Below, in pieces: positions 35,910-50,390 of a stretch of DNA of 64,000 bases. Origin of the DNA: Rhodosorus marinus CCMP1338. Lineage: Eukaryota > Plantae > Rhodophyta. The stretch is taken from assembly GCA_029953675.1 (NCBI GenBank), contig JAMWBK010000001.1, positions 1,798,001 through 1,862,000 on the forward strand, in the 5' to 3' direction. Below the pieces are notes generated by a model that was not told the DNA's origin, ran no database searches, and saw only the letters and a list, made by a program, of their open reading frames with translations. Within the stretch, counting starts at the first letter, position 1; each line of letters starts with the position of its first letter. The translations under genes were made by a program, and so were the position numbers.

Positions 35910-39037
<3,128 letters not shown>

Positions 39038-39250
39038 TCTAAAAACTACCCCCAAAACGCCCAATCCCAACCTCTCCCAACTCACTTACACAAGCAAACT
39101 AAAGCACGTCTATTAAACCACATACAACCAAAATCTCTCCCAATACTCCGATACCCTCCCACTCCACACCAAACCAGTTCATCATCTCAACCAAACCAAC
39201 CTCTCTCCCCAACATACCCGCTCAAAATCTCCTCGCTTTACACTTTTTCG

Positions 39251-39854
39251 CTTCCCGCAAAAAAAAATAAAAAATGAAGTCCTTTCCAATTACATCGATT
39301 TGATCATCCATCGCCCCAACTAAAAGTAAACATTTAGTCACCCTACCCTTAAAATATCTCACAAGCATATAACGTTTACAACTCCTACCCTTTGTCACCA
39401 ACACATTAAAATTCACAATATATATCAACATATTCCATTATTAACAAAATGAAAAGTTGGGATCAATTTTTACCCTCCCATATAAAAATGGAAATCCCAA
39501 GTTATTTGTATTTTTTTCGTACCCGTAAAAGAAGTATTTTTCCCAATTTATGCAAAAAATGAGTCCTTCTTCTGGTCTCGATGAATTTCTGGCTTTCAGC
39601 GATGTTTTCCCGCGCGACAGTTCCTTTCAATACGCAAAAGGTGTTTTTATTAATATTTTCGAACCCTTTAGAAAACGAACGTTTCACGTCCTAGTAATTT
39701 TTTTCTCCAGAACAGAGATAGTTTCCCGCGTTTCTCTTCTTCGGAATTTGTTTTTATATGAAATTAGGGTTTCCCCTGTATGATTGTATATTATTGGCTA
39801 CTCAGCACGTTAAATTACTTTTATATATTAAAATTGATGATTTATGGCGGGAAA
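39251..39854. promoter_or_regulatory. E2F-type sites upstream of MCM3
   Basis: TTTCCCGC at 39606 and 39722, GCGGGAAA at 39847, CTTCCCGC at 39251; telo-box-like TTAGGGTTT at 39764. MCM genes are canonical E2F targets. Confidence 0.6.
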
Positions 39855-39863
39855 TCTTATCGG

Positions 39864-41614
39864 TCAATCTGGTTGATTGGGAGTGTCAGCCGGTTGTGGA
39901 TTGGACTTGCTGTTAGATTGGACTGCAAGCGCATTCAGCTGCTGGTTAAGCCATTTGATGACCTGTAAGTGGGTTCGCTTCAGAAGCCTGAAAGAGAGTA
40001 GCGTTTCTGTTGTTGTTTGTGATGGTTTACCTCATGGTTGTTGAGAATCGTCTTCTTCTGACTGGAAATCAGATGATCCGCCTCCTGAAGCCTGTTCGTA
40101 AGCTCAGTAGACTGTTCAGCGAGGGCTTCTCTCTCGTCGAATTGTTTCTGCAGGACTTTGTACTTTTCCCGAAGACTGCTCATGGAGGCTACAAGAGCTT
40201 CCTTCTCAGCGAGCGCCACTTCCAACTTCTCCACCTGGAAGGAAGTGGCAACTTTTGCGCTCTCAGCGAACTTGAGTTGTTCCTCGCACTTGACCAGTTT
40301 CGAAGTCAGTTCAGCGTTCGCCGATTCAAGTCGTGCGCGTTCTGCAGCGCTCTAAACGTTAACGGTGAGGAGGAATTTAGAGGCTATGAGAAAATCGGCG
40401 CAATCGGTTTACAGAGTCTTGCCCGCTGGACCGTGCTTACCGACTCGAGCAAGGCCCCTATGTGGGAGGCCATCTTGTCTCCGTCCTTGGATGCTCTTTC
40501 CAAAAACTGTAGTTTCTCTGTAGCAGCCAGTTCTCTTTGCCGCGACGTTTTAGCCTCCGAGGATAGCTTCTCGCTCTCAGTCCTTTCCTTTTCGAGCGTT
40601 TTAAGCGCTTCACTCAACTGCGAAAAGCGATTTATGCTCTATTTTCAGCGCAAGCGGTTCACTGACAACCCTCGAGGACAGAAATTCTGAAATGAGCTGT
40701 TTGCAAACCTGCTTCTGCGAACCCTGCACATGCTTTCGAAGCTCCTCGGTCTCATGCTGGCTGTTCTCGAGCTTTTCAATTTTGTCCTGCAGTCTGGCCA
40801 CTTCTTCCGAAGATGCACGTTTGCTTTCCACCAGTTCCTGCAGAAACGTATATGAGTTAGATTATATCGAATGGTGCTATGGAATGGGGCTGCGGAGAGT
40901 GAGAAACACACATTTTGGAGTTTTCTAATCTCATCAGCGCTTTCCGCTCGTTTTCTTTTCTCTTGATCTGCGATATTCCCAGCTTCTGCAGCTTCCCGCG
41001 TAAGTCTATCGACGATGCCCTTGACGTGTAGGTCAACGTCAACTGGCTCAGCTTCCTTCACGTGCAGACTTAAATGTCTAAGCGTCTTGAACTCGTTTGG
41101 CTCCAAGATGGAGAATTGCTTAGTGACTCCCTGAGAGCAAATGTGCGTTTAGCTGAATGGGCCTCACTGGTTCATGCTGAACATGGCGATGTCGAAGACA
41201 CCAACTTACATCATCAACCTCTTCTACCCAAACTTCCAGACGAGGCTCTCGATGTGATTCTGCGCGGCACTCCTTTAAGAGCCCAGCAAGTTTCACCGGA
41301 AAGGAATTGAATTCGATCTTGAGACGCTGCTTTTGGCGTAGTTCAGCGTACTCGCCTGGACCACATTCAAAAACGAGAAGGAAAAGGGGTCTCTTGGAGT
41401 CGCTGATCTAAGCCCCCGAAGAGTTGATTCCATTTCGTCAGGTATCTTACACGGCATCGCAGCCCTGATTTGAACGCCCTACCTTCAAGCTCAGCGACAA
41501 CTCTCTTCCTCTTACATCCCGCTCCAGGACCACATTCAGATGCCGTTTCTCAACTTTCCCACCCTCCGCAACGAGCGACTCCAGAACTTCATCGAACAGC
41601 GTATTCGCTGCCAT
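39864..41614 (-). CDS. SAS6: Spindle assembly abnormal protein 6 (SAS-6) homolog, 7 exons, 424 aa
   Basis: Exons 41614-41483, 41407-41210, 41130-40912, 40837-40709, 40617-40441, 40351-40031, 39962-39864; six phase-0 GT-AG introns. Head: LKISDSKRPLFLL...EYAELRQKQRLKIEFNSFPVKLAGLLKEC...EPR...LEPNEFKTLRHLSL. Coiled coil ending TILNNHEVIKWLNQQLN. Confidence 0.88.
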
Positions 41615-41914
41615 GGATCTTTCCCTCCCAGACCCGTCCTCACGACGCAACAACCCCCACATCAACGCACCAATCCACCGTACAGCCTTCTACGCCTCAC
41701 ATCTCGCCCACATCACCCCTCAAACCCAACCGCCAAAGGAAACATTTCAATCCCACATATCAGATAGTCACCGAACTACCCTCCTCAGCCTATCTACCTT
41801 ACCTATATCCTCATCATCAACCCTCCCAGTGATCTACAAACCCCCAAGCTCCCCAACCTGATCCCAAATGAATCCCTTTGCCGCTTCAAGTACTAACCCA
41901 ACCACATACGCAGA

Positions 41915-42038
41915 AATATCTCAACATATTCCAGATATATAATATATCTCTAAATATGATAGATACCTTCAGATATGTAGAGGACGTATATATCGTAAGA
42001 TATATACCGATATGTTCACAATTCTCTAGATATGTTCA
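41915..42038. promoter_or_regulatory. Dense GATAT/ATATC motif cluster upstream of SAS-6
   Basis: About eight GATAT motifs on both strands in about 120 bp, including two copies of gatatgttca (42009, 42029). Confidence 0.3.
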
Positions 42039-42448: not shown

Positions 42449-43168
42449 TTACGGACCCATCCTCATTCTGTTCCCTACCACTCGTGTGAGACCTGCGCGT
42501 TGAATGTTTAACGCGATCAAGTCGTGACCAAGGTTGTCATCGTCTCTCACCATGAACACTCTTCCCTCAGAGTTGAAATTCTGCACAGCCGTGTCTCCAA
42601 CCCCAGTTGGCATGCCGATGCAAAATTCCTCGTCTTCCGCATTCGGGAGGGTCCAAACGACCTCAGTGAGGTGACCGCCATCCGCATGATCTGAACTGTC
42701 CAAAGAGGGTGTCTCAAACTCCGTGGACTCGCAACTCGCAACCCGAACGTGTACATTAGTCTTCATCTCCACGTCATAGACCACAACCTCGTCCCCATCT
42801 GTCATCGACCCCCGGACAGGGAGGTATCGGAACATCATGCTATCGAATGTAGCGCCGTTGGCGCTCGACGGGTCTTGCTCGTAGGTCCCGATTAACAGAC
42901 CATTCCTTGGTCCTTTGTGAAGCACGTTCTGAAGTATCGGCTCCGTGAAGTACGCAACCTGTTCTCGTCCCACATACCGAGTCTTAGCCCTTGACGTGTG
43001 AGTGAAATGACCAGCTGATTCATAAACTGGAGTTTCCGACACTTCCACAGCAATTTCTACAACATCTCCCAGATTTACATCGTAGAGCCGAAACGTTTCC
43101 CTCCGGGCATCTACAAGTACAGCTCCCAAGAGCAACAACACCCCACTGACTATGGCTGTCTTCCTCAT
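42449..43168 (-). CDS. Single-exon secreted orphan protein, 239 aa
   Basis: ATG-started ORF with a typical signal peptide (MRKTAIVSGVLLLLGAVLVDA); acidic, beta-strand-like mature part; no family recognised. Confidence 0.75.
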   Translation of the reverse strand: MRKTAIVSGVLLLLGAVLVDARRETFRLYDVNLGDVVEIAVEVSETPVYESAGHFTHTSRAKTRYVGREQVAYFTEPILQNVLHKGPRNGLLIGTYEQDPSSANGATFDSMMFRYLPVRGSMTDGDEVVVYDVEMKTNVHVRVASCESTEFETPSLDSSDHADGGHLTEVVWTLPNAEDEEFCIGMPTGVGDTAVQNFNSEGRVFMVRDDDNLGHDLIALNIQRAGLTRVVGNRMRMGP

Positions 43169-44137: not shown

Positions 44138-47100
44138 CTAAACTTCGTCGTCCCTGGTTCTAGCCTCGTCTGGAGGCGCATCATTGACGTCGTCGAAGTT
44201 TATAGTTACGTCCTTATTTGCGCCAGGCTCGTCCTCGAAACCTCGCAGGCCAGGTAGATTCGTTAGGTCGACATTAACTCCCGCGTTCACGGCGGAAACT
44301 CCACCCGCAGCGTTCAGGGCTTCTTCATATGCAGAGCCAGCCACAACCTCGTCAATGGGTACGCTTCGACCAGTAGCACGTTTCGCAACCACCTTCGGGG
44401 GAGCCTTAATCTGGCCGTCCGCCGCAATACTCTTCATTTCCTCCATCTTCTTGTTCGCATCTCTGCCATTGATCCACCAAAGTCCAGCAGCGAGGATAAC
44501 AACGACAACGAACAGAATAAGACCCACGTACCACAGACTCAGATCTGGCCTCATTAGCGAAATCGCGACAAGCCCCACCGTAGTCATCAGCTTGATGAGA
44601 ATGTTCATAGAAGGCCCGCTAGTGTCCTTAAACGGATCGCCAACAGTATCACCAGCAACCGTAGCCTTATGCCACTCGGATCCTTTCGAGTTCTCCTCAC
44701 CAAAAAAGCCAGACTCAACCAACTTCTTCGCATTATCCCATGCTCCACCGGCGTTGGACATCAGAATTCCCATCATATATCCGCTGCCGATTGCAGCAAT
44801 CAGCAGCCCAACCAACGGCTGTTGACCAAACGCGAACCCAATAATCAGCGGAGAGAGAATTGCAATCATCCCTGGCGCAATCATTTCGCGGATGGATGAA
44901 GTTGTCGATATAGCAATACAGCGCCGGTGGTTAGGTCGAACTCCAGGCTTTCCCTCACGGAGACCGGGCATGGTATTGAACTGATGACGTACTTCAGCCA
45001 TGATCGCCCTTGCTGCCCTTGACACAGCGAGCATTGTCAAGGCACCGAACAAATACGGCAACATGATACCAATAAACACCGCTCCAACAACGTAAATGTC
45101 AGTCAACGATATTTGGATAGTATCGTCCAGGATCTTTGTGGGCAACTCATCCGCTGTACCCGTCAGTTCAATTGGGTCCGGAGCAAGCCCAGAATCCTGA
45201 ATCAGAGCGGTTAGGAGAGCATACGCAGTAAGCACTGCAGATCCATTCGAGAACCCTTTCCCAGTGGCAGCTGTGGTGTTTCCCAACGCATCGAGGGCAT
45301 CAGTAGTTTCTCTCACTTCCGGCGGCAACTCAGCCATTTCCGCAATGCCCCCAGCATTGTCTGCCACAGGCCCATAAGCGTCCGTTGCCATAGTAATGCC
45401 CAGCGTACTCAACATTCCCACTGCGCTTACAGCTATTCCGTACGCAGAGAACAAAGCAAATGTTCCTATGATAACAGCAAGCACCAGTAACATCGGCGCC
45501 ACCGTGGAAAGCATTCCAATCCCAAGTCCTTGGATAACAACAGCTCCAGGTCCATACTCGCCGCTTTGCGCGATGCTCTTCGTGGGCCAGTAGCCCCCGC
45601 TCGTCGAGAATTCAGTCAAGAACCCGATACTGACTCCAAGGAGAAGACCGAGAATCACGCACAAAAATAGCCTCCATGGCACCTCGACCGGAGCTGGATA
45701 CTCATAGAGGAGGGAATCCAAAGGTCTATAGTAATCAAAATCTATGAAAGAGCCATCTGGAATATTGTTCTCATTAGGGATGCACTGTGTATCCGGGTCG
45801 CTAGAAAGTACGAAGCGCGGGAGATCCGGTCTTCCAAATCCAAGGTTGTTCTGGAAGTCAGAACCAGCACCAAAGAAGCCCCAAGCAAGGCCAGCGGCCC
45901 CTCCCAGGACGAATACGGCTCCGACTGCAATGTTCAAATTAAGTGCAAGCAGGAGCTTCTCATTCCAGTGCTCACGCTTGACCTTGGACAGGTCGGGTAC
46001 GCGAACGTAGAAAGTACATATGCAAGCAGTCAAGACCCCGACGCATCCCATCATAAACGGAAAGGCAACGAACAATGACACCGATCCGAAGGTTCGAAGA
46101 AATGGATACGTCAGATAAAAGTCCTCATTGGTGCAGATAAAATATGCATACGAAGTGCCGTCCGGAAATCCAAGAGGGCCACAGGTTTCGTCAATGTAAA
46201 GGTGGTTGGCAACGCACAGCGCAAGGGAATTGCTGAAATAGTACGGCAGCGAGGCCCCAAGAATCGCCGTCGCTACAATGGAACCCACATATGATTCGAA
46301 CAAGTCAGCTCCCATCCCTGCGACGTCCCCGACGTTATCTCCAACGTTGTCTGCAATAGTCGCAGGATTTCGGGGGTCATCCTCTGGAATACCAGCCTCA
46401 ACTTTTCCAATGAGATCGGCACCCACATCAGCGGCTTTTGTATAAATGCCTCCACCGACACGAGCAAACAAGGCAACCGAGGACGCCCCAGCGGAGAAAC
46501 CGGCTAGTGCACGAACGTCCCGTAGCAGAAGATAAGAGGCCGAGAGACCTCCCAGTCCTGTGGAAACCACTGCTAGACCCATGACTGCCCCACTGCGAAA
46601 CGCAATGTTCAGGCCATCTTCAATTCCTATTGCTGACATTGCGGAAGTACGAACGTTTCCTCGAGTTGCGATGCTCATCCCTATGTAACCCGTGACACCC
46701 GACAGAATGGCCCCTATTAACAGGCACACAGCCAGTCGCCAGTTGATTCCAAAGCCGGTGAGCAACAACAGCGCGAGGATCAGTATTATCAGAAACGCGT
46801 ATTCACGACGAAGAAACTCCACAGAGCCCTCTCGGATATACGAAGCAATTTCAACCATTCTCGGGGTGCCGCAGTCCTGACGTATGACGTTGATCGCGTA
46901 CAAACACACCACCACATACCCAAGAGCTGCTGCTGTCATCGCCGCCCAGATATAAACAGACGGAACTAAGAACGCAGAAAATGGAACATGCACATTGGCT
47001 TAGCAAGTCGGGACAATGACAGCCTGGCACCTGGACCTTCGATGTGGTTGCACGCTTACTTATAAACGGAAATGTTTCGAACAAGTAGCCTGCATCCGGG

Positions 47101-49031: not shown

Positions 49032-50390
49032 CTACTTCTTTGCAGCCTTCTGGGCCGACTTGGTTGCCTTGCCCTCGGTCTCCTTCTTCTCGACGGACTT
49101 GATGACACCGACGGCCACCGTTTGCCGCATGTCACGGACCGCAAATCGTCCCAATGGAGGGTAGGACGTAAAGCTCTCAACGCACATAGGCTTGGACGGA
49201 ATCATGTTCACCATGGCGGCGTCTCCGGACTTGATCATCTTCGGGGCCTCTTCAACAGTCTTTCCAGTTCGCCTGTCGATCTTGACAAGGAGCTCCTTGA
49301 ACTTGCACGCAATATGCGCGGTGTGGCAGTCAAGAACCGGCGCGTATCCCGCGTGGATTTCTCCGGGGTGGTTCAGAATGATAACCTGGGCCTTGAAGCT
49401 AGCGCATCCCGACGCGGGATCGCTCTTGCTGTCCGAGCACACGTAACCACGCTTCAGGTCCTTAACAGCAACATTCTTAACGTTGAACCCGACGTTGTCA
49501 CCAGGCACGGCCTGGGGAAGGGATTCGTGATGCATTTCTACGGACTTGACTTCAGTGGACAGGCCAGTAGGCGCGAAAGTCACCACCATACCGGGCTTGA
49601 TAACTCCAGTTTCCACACGTCCCACAGGCACGGTTCCGATACCTCCGATCTTGTACACGTCCTGAAGCGGAAGCCTCAGAGGCTTGTCCGACGGTCTCTT
49701 CGGGGGCTGGATCGCGTCCAGAGCCTCCAGCAGGCACATGCCCTTATACCAGGCTCCAAGCGGATGGTCTCCCTTCACCTTCTCGAAGAGGTTGTCACCT
49801 GTCCATCCAGAGGTAGGAATCTTGGGTACCTTGGCGGGGTTGTACCCGACCTTCTTAAGGTAAAGATCCATCTCCTTCGAGATTTCGTCGTATCTATCCT
49901 TAGACCAGTTCACAGATTTGTCGTCCATCTTGTTGCACGCAACGATCATCTGCTTCACACCAAGGGTGAAAGCAAGCAGGGCGTGCTCACGGGTCTGTCC
50001 GTTCTGGGAGATTCCAGCTTCGAACTCACCTGGTGGAGACGCAACAACAAGAATGGCAAGATCGGCCTGCGAGGTACCGGTAATCATGTTCTTGATGAAA
50101 TCACGATGTCCAGGGGCGTCGATGATGGTGAAGAAGTACTTGTCGGTCTCGAACTTCCACAACGCAATATCGATGGTGATACCACGCTCACGCTCGGCCT
50201 TCAATTTGTCCAGCACCCAGGCGTACTTGAAGGATCCCTTGCCCATTTCGGCGGCCTCCTTCTCGAACTTCTCGATGGCTCGCTTATCGATACCACCGCA
50301 CTTGTAGATTAAGTGTCCAGTAGTCGTCGACTTCCCAGCGTCGACATGTCCAATGACGACAATAGAAACGTGCTGCTTTTCCTTACCCAT
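49032..50390 (-). CDS. EF1A: Translation elongation factor 1-alpha, intronless, 452 aa
   Basis: [42 protein letters not shown]. Confidence 0.99.

What the first reader, a model, noticed from the sequence alone, without database searches (positions are those of the whole stretch)
39864..41614. Intact SAS-6 (centriole cartwheel protein) in an apparently red-algal, acentriolar genome
Seen in sequence: the ORF track fragments this locus into anonymous coiled-coil pieces. Splicing seven exons across six phase-0 GT-AG introns gives one 424-aa frame. It has the SAS-6 head (FLL...Y..L...Q.L.I.F..FP.K...LL..C...PR), the loop LEPNEFKTLRHLSL (human VETNPFKHLTHLSL, recalled), a coiled coil and the terminal NNHEVIKWLNQQLN. 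Established: SAS-6 builds the 9-fold cartwheel through head-to-head contacts needing that loop Phe (human F131); it is retained here as F124. Red algae are described as lacking centrioles and flagella at all stages, and many have polar rings or nucleus-associated organelles at spindle poles instead. Inference: this could be a cartwheel protein repurposed for an acentriolar, ring-shaped spindle-pole structure. I cannot rule out that red-algal SAS-6 homologs have already been noted.
Basis: partly seen in the sequence, partly recalled or inferred. Interest (0 to 1): 0.92.

Follow-up and report, generated by a model that had tools for sequence, protein, structure and literature searches.

The report
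Intact SAS-6 gene in red alga
A red alga (Rhodosorus marinus), from a phylum defined by having no centrioles or flagella, carries an intact, expressed and selectively maintained gene for SAS-6, the protein that templates the nine-fold centriole cartwheel, so the alga either hides a centriole-like structure or uses the protein for something else.

Summary
On the minus strand, 41614-39864, seven exons joined across six phase-0 GT-AG introns give a 424-aa protein, identical to NCBI's model NDN08_005427.

It is a true SAS-6:
- Pfam SAS-6_N scores 62.6 bits against a cutoff of 25.
- The AlphaFold head model (pLDDT 94) matches only solved SAS-6 heads among the top 50 PDB hits.
- The oligomerisation-loop Phe (F124) lies in a column invariant across 34 family members.
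- A helical rod of about 270 residues follows the head.

The host is a red alga: Rhodosorus marinus CCMP1338, on a 3.8-Mb nuclear contig among housekeeping genes.

Transcripts from two other Rhodosorus lineages confirm all six junctions. dN/dS is 0.23-0.30, with no indels in 424 codons, while retained introns carry indels. One more distant relative with the same architecture (P0005) exists in an unidentified transcriptome.

The polar-ring idea is untested. I could not survey other centriole genes or other red algae. None of the papers returned by ten full-text searches reports a red-algal SAS-6, although UniRef already auto-names this protein. The phyletic anomaly is real and interesting; what the protein does is open.

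The parts
39864..41614 (-). SAS-6 coding region, start codon to stop codon: 7 exons, 6 phase-0 GT-AG introns, 424 aa. It equals NCBI NDN08_005427 of Rhodosorus marinus.
41483..41614 (-). Exon 1 (residues 1-44)
   Evidence: The junction with exon 2 is spliced in L002 and L003.
41210..41407 (-). Exon 2 (residues 45-110). It contains the PISA-motif core (F53, L67, Q71, F77, F80, P81, L87).
41131..41209 (-). Intron 2 (79 nt). It is retained in both JGI transcript contigs and spliced in the MMETSP0011 protein P0002. Retention gives a premature stop and a truncated head-only ORF.
40912..41130 (-). Exon 3 (residues 111-183). It covers the hairpin loop, the end of the head and the start of the rod.
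41089..41091 (-). Codon TTC for F124, the hairpin-loop Phe. It is equivalent to zebrafish/human F131 and Chlamydomonas F145.
   Evidence: invariant column in 34 heads; loop between strands 113-121 and 126-136; the F131E, F145W and F257E mutant entries are named at this site.
40709..40837 (-). Exon 4 (residues 184-226), rod
40441..40617 (-). Exon 5 (residues 227-285), rod. It includes the conserved island and the helix break.
40441..40512 (-). Conserved island within the rod (residues 262-285, FLERASKDGDKMASHIGALLES). It is 46% identical to P0005, against 24-26% for the rest of the rod. The predicted helix break lies at 267-272.
40031..40351 (-). Exon 6 (residues 286-392), rod
39864..39962 (-). 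Exon 7 (residues 393-424 plus the stop codon). It holds the end of the rod with the VIKWLNQQLN motif, then a tail of only about 13 residues.
41047..41614 (-). Genomic span encoding the head domain (residues 1-138), including introns 1 and 2
39906..41046 (-). Genomic span encoding the helical rod (residues 139-411). It forms two predicted helices, 139-266 and 273-411, and has no proline in residues 146-400.
39779..39863 (-). 3' UTR, at least as far as transcript L002 aligns
41615..41763 (-). 5' UTR or upstream transcribed region, as far as L002 aligns. It contains an in-frame ATG at 41662-41660.

Best explanation
This is the nuclear SAS-6 orthologue of the red alga Rhodosorus marinus. It appears to be vertically inherited, and it is still expressed and still under functional constraint.

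Shown: the protein has a canonical SAS-6 head, with the PISA motif and a hairpin loop carrying F124. A helical rod of about 270 residues in two segments follows directly. The rod breaks at a conserved KDG island, and almost no C-terminal tail follows it.

Inferred from the family's established mechanism: two chains pair through the rod into a parallel dimer. F124 of one head then inserts into a pocket on the head of a neighbouring dimer, which chains the dimers into a ring or spiral with outward spokes.

Not shown: where this happens in the alga. My best guess is that the protein scaffolds a small structure at the spindle pole or nucleus-associated organelle of dividing vegetative cells, one that is centriole-derived but lacks microtubule triplets (a vestigial cartwheel or ring). 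On this reading it does not build a full centriole.

Confidence by step: about 0.95 that it is a genuine, constrained SAS-6 in a genuine red alga; about 0.7 that it still self-assembles through F124; about 0.35 for the spindle-pole or vestigial-cartwheel location.
For: Identity:
- Pfam SAS-6_N, E=5.6e-17, 62.6 bits against a cutoff of 25.
- The best PDB sequence hits are all SAS-6.
- The AF2 head model has pLDDT 94.4 and pTM 0.85.
- The Foldseek top 50 are all SAS-6 heads from five species, with target TM-scores up to 0.88.

Interface:
- F124, F80, E120, N122 and L132 lie in invariant columns, and six further positions conserved at 90% or more are all retained.
- F124 lies in the hairpin loop.

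Rod:
- Helices 139-266 and 273-411.
- No proline in residues 146-400.

Host:
- EF-1alpha from the window matches GCA_029953675.1 contig JAMWBK010000001.1, 3.8 Mb.
- That accession is R. marinus CCMP1338.
- The neighbouring genes are housekeeping genes.

Expression and splicing.

Constraint:
- dN/dS is 0.23-0.30 in three pairwise comparisons. The head alone gives 0.18-0.22.
- Fisher p ranges from 1e-10 to 4e-18.
- There are no indels in 424 codons, whereas the retained introns are 78-81% identical with indels.

Deep conservation: P0005 aligns end to end, shares the EPNEF loop and the KDG island, and is the reciprocal best hit.
Against: - No localisation, oligomerisation or partner data exist.
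- I could not test whether CEP135/BLD10, SAS-4/CPAP, STIL or delta/epsilon-tubulin are present in Rhodosorus.
- The usual long C-terminal tail is missing. From my own knowledge of the family, that tail contributes to links toward the centriole wall.
- The head is somewhat more divergent than typical. It scores 101-118 bits on a generic SAS-6 head profile, against 140-210 for most of the best-matching members. Core identity to other heads is 31%, against 38% among those heads.
- The exhaustive search showed a red-type SAS-6 only in Rhodosorus and one unidentified transcriptome. It is therefore not evidently a general red-algal spindle-pole component.
- Both JGI transcript contigs retain intron 2, so much of the mRNA may be unproductive.
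Confidence: 0.55

Rival explanations
1. Cryptic centriole. Rhodosorus, and perhaps other early-branching mesophilic red algae, still builds a true cartwheel-templated centriole or basal body. It could be a tiny or transient one, or belong to an undescribed flagellated or sexual stage. SAS-6 would then do its ordinary job.
For: SAS-6 presence is reported to track centriole presence almost perfectly across eukaryotes (PMC3144413). Here the interface residues are intact and under purifying selection. I found no study of spindle-pole ultrastructure in Rhodosorus itself; my only source is a table entry, 'ring shaped', in a 2026 review.
Against: Red algae are defined as lacking centrioles, basal bodies and 9+2 structures at all stages (PMC6492006; PMC9010356). 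The transcripts come from MMETSP culture transcriptomes, which as far as I know are ordinary vegetative cultures. The protein lacks the long C-terminal tail. The presence of other centriole genes was not tested.
Confidence: 0.2
2. Moonlighting. The protein has been kept for a role unrelated to spindle poles or centriole remnants, for example as a self-assembling scaffold elsewhere in the cell. Its SAS-6 ancestry would then be only historical.
For: The gene occurs in a lineage without centrioles. The head is moderately divergent. The tail is lost. An island inside the rod is conserved between Rhodosorus and P0005, and I did not check whether other SAS-6 proteins share it; it could be a binding site for a partner. 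From my own knowledge, SAS6-like paralogues act outside the cartwheel in apicomplexans; SAS-6L is mentioned in PMC5756292.
Against: The residues that matter for cartwheel-type oligomerisation are exactly the ones conserved, and the whole architecture is canonical. No positive evidence points to any other function.
Confidence: 0.17
3. Decaying relic. The gene is a leftover on its way to loss, transcribed but without function, in the way Ostreococcus is said to keep some centriole genes.
For: Exceptions to the gene-structure correlation have been read this way (PMC3144413). Intron 2 is retained in both JGI transcript contigs.
Against: dN/dS is 0.18-0.34 in both head and rod (0.5-0.7 in the short 24-residue tail). 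Three lineages separated by dS 0.25-0.38 share no indel or stop in 424 codons, while their introns accumulate indels. A relative at about 30% overall identity keeps the same length and architecture. From my own knowledge, crown red algae are about a billion years old, far too long for a neutral ORF to survive.
Confidence: 0.04
4. Contaminant or recent horizontal transfer. On this view the gene belongs to, or was recently taken from, a flagellated organism.
For: None found.
Against: The gene lies in the middle of a 3.8-Mb contig of a near-chromosome-level assembly, between MCM, H+-PPase, EF-1alpha and other housekeeping genes. Orthologues occur in two independently sequenced Rhodosorus transcriptomes. 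No donor-like close relative exists: every non-red-type hit is only about 25-40% identical, and the hits are spread over choanoflagellates, chytrids and stramenopiles.
Confidence: 0.02

Closest known systems
Canonical SAS-6 (human SASS6, zebrafish SAS-6, Chlamydomonas Bld12p/CrSAS-6, Leishmania SAS-6, C. elegans SAS-6)
   Same: The head fold matches, with target TM-scores of 0.63-0.88. The PISA-motif residues and the hairpin Phe are retained. The helical rod starts directly after the head. A VI.WLN..LN-type motif sits near the end of the rod.
   Different: At 424 aa it is shorter than most full-length hits, which run about 550-700 aa. The disordered C-terminal tail is almost absent, at about 13 residues. 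The loop reads EPNEF rather than the usual E(T/S)N.F. The head is moderately more divergent. The host phylum is described as having no centrioles.
P0005, a 426-aa protein from a polyadenylated mRNA in JGI transcriptome sample 3300016877 (organism not identified)
   Same: It is the reciprocal best hit. The length is the same, and it aligns end to end with one 11-residue indel. It shares the ILEPNEF loop, SFPVKL, the KDG island and the NN.E.IK motif.
   Different: It is only 37% identical in the head and 24-26% in the rod. Its source organism is unknown, so it cannot yet be counted as a second red alga.
SAS6-like (SAS6L) paralogues of apicomplexans and kinetoplastids
   Same: They are SAS-6-family heads that work outside the centriole cartwheel (my own knowledge; SAS-6L is mentioned in PMC5756292). 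That is a precedent for non-cartwheel use of this fold.
   Different: SAS6L proteins lack the long coiled-coil rod (my own knowledge). The Rhodosorus protein has a rod of about 270 residues, so it is of the canonical type and not the SAS6L type.
Ostreococcus, a green alga without a visible centriole that keeps some centriole genes
   Same: It is also an exception to the rule that the centriole genes are absent where the structure is absent (PMC3144413).
   Different: [quoted passage not shown] The red-algal condition is a trait of the whole phylum, and the gene here is demonstrably under purifying selection.
XRCC4 / XLF / PAXX / CCDC61 superfamily
   Same: They share the general plan of a beta-rich head followed by a coiled-coil stalk (my own knowledge).
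   Different: None of them appears among the top 50 structural matches, and none gives a Pfam hit.

Membership tests
SAS-6 | N-terminal SAS-6 head domain with the PISA motif (Pfam PF16531 above its gathering score) | tested here: met
   62.6 bits against a cutoff of 25, E=5.6e-17, residues 33-133. It scores 101-118 bits on a generic head profile built here.
SAS-6 | Head fold superposes on solved SAS-6 heads | tested here: met
   The AF2 model has pLDDT 94.4. The Foldseek top 50 are all SAS-6, with E down to 1.8e-11 and target TM-scores up to 0.88.
SAS-6 | Hydrophobic residue at the tip of the hairpin loop that mediates head-to-head contact (F131 in human and zebrafish, F145 in Chlamydomonas) | tested here: met
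   F124 aligns to that position. The column is invariant in 34 heads, and the residue lies in the loop between strands 113-121 and 126-136. This is residue conservation only; the contact itself was not tested.
SAS-6 | Long coiled-coil rod directly after the head, which makes the parallel dimer and the cartwheel spoke | tested here: inconclusive
   Helices 139-266 and 273-411 are predicted at pLDDT about 80-92. There is no proline in residues 146-400, and the composition is rich in E, L, A and K. My simple heptad score did not discriminate, and dimerisation cannot be tested with these tools.
SAS-6 | Extended, poorly conserved C-terminal tail after the rod (typical of the family, not strictly defining) | tested here: not met
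   Only residues 412-424 follow the last helix. Most full-length hits are 550-700 aa.
SAS-6 | Assembly into nine-fold rings | not testable with these tools
   This needs recombinant protein and EM, AFM or crystallography.
SAS-6 | Localises to the cartwheel and is required for centriole assembly | not testable with these tools
   This needs cell biology in Rhodosorus.
SAS-6 | Co-occurs with the rest of the core module (SAS-4/CPAP and CEP135/BLD10; PMC3144413) | not tested
SAS6-like (SAS6L) | SAS-6 head without the long coiled-coil rod | tested here: not met
   A rod of about 270 residues is present, so this protein is not of the SAS6L type.
XRCC4/XLF/CCDC61 | Best sequence or structure match to those families | tested here: not met
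   There is no such Pfam hit, and none appears among the top 50 fold matches.

The most novel reading that the evidence does not exclude
In Rhodosorus and its relatives the spindle-pole body (nucleus-associated organelle or polar ring) is a stripped-down centriole remnant. A SAS-6 ring or cartwheel would persist as the templating core after the microtubule wall, the flagellum and most other centriole genes were lost. Red-algal polar organelles would then be homologous to centrioles, and SAS-6 self-assembly could be maintained by selection for hundreds of millions of years with no centriole around it.
Probability: 0.22. Interest if true: 0.9.

Novelty: new member of a known kind. Interest (0 to 1): 0.72.

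Why it matters
SAS-6, SAS-4 and CEP135 are treated as a module whose presence predicts centrioles almost perfectly. Red algae are the textbook phylum without centrioles or flagella.

A SAS-6 that is demonstrably constrained in a red alga breaks that rule in a way gradual loss cannot explain. It also shows that the red-algal ancestor did not shed the whole centriole toolkit during its genome reduction.

It turns an old ultrastructural question into an experiment: what are red-algal polar rings and nucleus-associated organelles, and are they related to centrioles? The route is to localise this one protein and test its F124-dependent assembly. A chromosome-scale genome and culture strains already exist for this organism.

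If a cryptic centriole turns up instead, a defining character of the phylum would need revising.

Tried and rejected
1. Word-indexed homologue searches with the full protein, the head alone and a 34-sequence head alignment. They returned only Rhodosorus sequences and one unrelated JGI entry, not even the alignment's own members. They cannot be used to survey other red algae.

2. Metagenome scan with a red-type alignment. 290 pattern matches, none confirmed. The JGI transcriptome contigs are evidently not in that collection.

3. Naming the HMMER hits by cluster look-up. The named ones are choanoflagellates, chytrids and a stramenopile; none is red-algal and most have no name.

4. I suspected that the GC-rich, intron-free hits (P0012, P0013, P0015, P0021) and the 423-aa P0042 might come from Bangiales. 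Their contigs (L005, L006) and neighbouring genes gave no names. P0021's cluster has 40 members from marine metagenomes, which suggests an abundant picoeukaryote. Unresolved and dropped.

5. The organism behind JGI sample 3300016877 (P0005/L004) could not be identified. GC content and codon use are not diagnostic.

6. My simple heptad-register script did not separate rod from head. I relied on the AF2 helices and the absence of proline instead.

7. The full-length AF2 run on a 3-sequence alignment modelled the head poorly, as expected. Only its rod is used.

8. Hodges 2010 and the Porphyra genome paper are not held.

9. One loosely phrased paper search returned no SAS-6 papers.

10. The antisense ORF at 40010-40690 (226 aa) lies opposite a transcript-confirmed gene and was not examined further; I treat it as a chance reading frame.
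Full report
**The observation**

I read 39500-42000 on both strands and rebuilt the gene on the minus strand. The exons are 41614-41483, 41407-41210, 41130-40912, 40837-40709, 40617-40441, 40351-40031 and 39962-39864. The six introns are 68-91 nt; all begin GT, end AG and are phase 0. The CDS is 1275 nt and encodes 424 aa.

It is also 100% identical to NCBI's own model, 'hypothetical protein NDN08_005427 [Rhodosorus marinus]', which UniRef auto-names 'Spindle assembly abnormal protein' (P0001). A long plus-strand ORF at 40010-40690 lies antisense to this gene; I did not examine it further and treat it as a chance reading frame.

**Is it SAS-6?**

Pfam SAS-6_N matches residues 33-133 at E=5.6e-17, 62.6 bits against a gathering score of 25. 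Nothing else is significant. By sequence, the best solved structures are the SAS-6 heads of zebrafish, Chlamydomonas, human and Leishmania.

I aligned the head with 33 other heads taken from an exhaustive HMMER search. F80, E120, N122, F124 and L132 fall in invariant columns. F53, L67, Q71, F77, P81 and L87 fall in columns conserved at 90% or more, and Rhodosorus has the consensus residue at all of them.

An AlphaFold2 model of residues 1-178 built on that alignment (without the L003-derived row) has mean pLDDT 94.4 and pTM 0.85. All 50 top Foldseek matches in the PDB are SAS-6 heads from zebrafish, Leishmania, Chlamydomonas, human or C. elegans. E-values go down to 1.8e-11 and target TM-scores reach 0.88. 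No XRCC4, XLF or CCDC61 entry appears among them.

F124 sits in the four-residue loop between strands 113-121 and 126-136. It aligns with the residue that is mutated in the PDB entries described as F131E (human), F145W/C (Chlamydomonas) and F257E (Leishmania).

A full-length model on a shallow alignment predicts the remainder as two long helices, 139-266 and 273-411, followed by only 13 residues. Residues 146-400 contain no proline.

The protein is therefore a canonical head-plus-rod SAS-6 and not a head-only SAS6L type. It lacks the long C-terminal tail usual in the family.

**Who is the host?**

The intronless EF-1alpha at 49032-50390 matches exactly one record: NCBI GCA_029953675.1, contig JAMWBK010000001.1, 3.8 Mb. 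That accession is the nuclear assembly of Rhodosorus marinus CCMP1338: 31.2 Mb in 13 large contigs, 12 contigs with at least one telomere (PMC10250338).

R. marinus belongs to Rhodophyta, class Stylonematophyceae. Genes around SAS-6 are ordinary nuclear housekeeping genes: MCM, a DEAD/SPRY helicase, an RPB2-family polymerase subunit, peptidyl-tRNA hydrolase, H+-PPase, EF-1alpha, NOG1, Las1 and a polyprenyl synthase.

Contamination is excluded. So is the alternative that the host is a flagellated relative such as Rhodelphis or a glaucophyte.

**Is it used?**

Two transcript contigs from other Rhodosorus cultures were recovered. L002 comes from JGI sample 3300017118, and its spliced CDS equals the MMETSP0011 protein P0002. 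L003 comes from JGI sample 3300016967.

L003 is spliced at introns 1, 3, 4, 5 and 6 exactly at the predicted boundaries. L002 is spliced at introns 1, 3 and 4. Intron 2 is retained in both, but it is removed in P0002. All six junctions therefore have RNA-level support in close relatives.

The three coding sequences are each 424 codons, with no indel or stop between them. Pairwise dS is 0.25-0.38 and dN/dS is 0.23-0.30. The head alone gives 0.18-0.22. The deficit of non-synonymous change has Fisher p between 1e-10 and 4e-18. The retained introns are only 78-81% identical and carry indels.

The gene is under purifying selection across its length.

**Relatives**

I ran an exhaustive HMMER search of 1.84 billion representative proteins with the head. 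It found 218 hits at E<=0.001.

Apart from Rhodosorus fragments, one hit stands out. P0005 (E=5e-15) is encoded on a 1490-nt polyadenylated mRNA from JGI sample 3300016877 (L004).
- From its first Met it is 426 aa and aligns end to end with the Rhodosorus protein, with one 11-residue indel.
- It shares the otherwise unique ILEPNEF loop, SFPVKL, the NN.E.IK motif and an island inside the rod (ER..KDG..M.S.I..L.E).
- That island is 46% identical, against 24-26% for the rest of the rod, and it coincides with the predicted helix break.
- The two proteins are reciprocal best hits. They are the only 'red-type' sequences when scored with a red-type profile against a generic one.

I could not identify P0005's organism. 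Another red alga among the cultured-protist transcriptomes is my inference, not a result.

All other listed hits are ordinary SAS-6 at about 25-40% head identity. The named ones are choanoflagellates, chytrids and a stramenopile.

The red-type head is modestly more divergent than usual. Its core identity to other heads averages 31%, against 38% among those heads. It scores 90-118 bits on a generic profile, where most of the best-matching members score 140-210.

**Mechanism**

Shown: the gene is an intact, expressed and constrained SAS-6 that keeps every residue the family conserves, including the loop Phe.

Inferred from the family's established mechanism: the rod forms a parallel dimer, and F124-mediated head-to-head contacts link dimers into a ring or spiral.

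Not shown: where this happens or why. I commit to a small, centriole-derived structure without a microtubule wall at the spindle pole of dividing vegetative cells, at roughly 0.35.

The rivals are:
- a genuine cryptic centriole (0.2);
- an unrelated scaffold role (0.17);
- a decaying relic (0.04);
- contamination or recent transfer (0.02).

However, most hits could not be named, and intron-split genes in short-read assemblies would escape detection. That absence is weak evidence.

**Comparison with what is known**

The literature states the rule plainly. [quoted passage not shown]

There is 'almost perfect correlation' between absence of the centriole and absence of the SAS6, SAS4/CPAP and BLD10/CEP135 module. 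[quoted passage not shown] The red-algal ancestor is thought to have lost about a quarter of its genes (PMC6811547).

Ten full-text searches returned no paper that reports SAS-6 in a red alga. The genome paper does not mention centrioles or flagella. Subscription journals are largely outside that library, so an earlier report cannot be excluded. The automatic UniRef name shows that databases already 'know' the domain.

**Verdict**

The identification of both protein and host is correct. The functional idea is untested.

As a protein, this is a new member of a known family with a shortened tail. As a phyletic fact, it is a clean exception to a well-used rule that cannot be put down to decay, and it occurs in an organism with a good genome and available cultures.

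Interest is 0.72. It would rise sharply with localisation to the spindle pole or discovery of a hidden centriole. It would fall if the rest of the centriole toolkit and a flagellated stage prove to be simply undescribed in this genus.

Noticed in passing
window 41131-41209 (intron 2); L002 and L003: Both JGI transcript contigs, from two different Rhodosorus lineages, retain intron 2. Retention gives a premature stop and ORFs of 163-172 aa (P0003, P0004) that end before the F124 loop and the rod. This could be inefficient splicing, regulated unproductive splicing, or a truncated head-only product.
   Followed up: partly
window 41660-41662: An in-frame ATG lies 16 codons upstream of the annotated start (MWGLLRREDGSGRERS-MAANT...). 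It is also present in L002/P0003. L003's contig starts downstream of it, and P0005 supports the shorter start. The true N-terminus is therefore not fully settled.
   Followed up: partly
window 40441-40512 (residues 262-285): A conserved island sits inside the rod (FLERASKDGDKMASHIGALLES), 46% identical to P0005. It coincides with the only predicted break in the helix. It may be a hinge or a partner-binding site. I did not check whether other SAS-6 proteins have it.
   Followed up: partly
window 38285-39085 (minus strand): An MCM-family replication helicase gene (MCM_N and MCM_OB domains) lies about 780 bp downstream of the SAS-6 stop codon on the same strand. This places an S-phase gene next to a gene that in other organisms is switched on at S phase. 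No shared regulation was tested.
   Followed up: no
window 42449-43168 (minus strand): The ORF immediately upstream of SAS-6 (239 aa, hydrophobic N-terminus suggesting a signal peptide) has no Pfam match.
   Followed up: no
window 44138-46993 and 49032-50390: H+-pyrophosphatase and EF-1alpha are single uninterrupted ORFs, whereas SAS-6 nearby has six short introns. Intron density varies strongly between neighbouring genes.
   Followed up: no
L006 8001-9272 (Logan SRR23272274) and L007: An intronless 423-aa SAS-6 (P0042) occurs in an unidentified organism. It is almost the same length as the Rhodosorus protein and has a similar C-terminal VIAYLNRQLN motif, but it is generic rather than red-type in sequence. 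Short-tailed SAS-6 proteins therefore exist elsewhere.
   Followed up: partly
window 1-64000: ARAGORN found no tRNA genes anywhere in the 64-kb window.
   Followed up: yes
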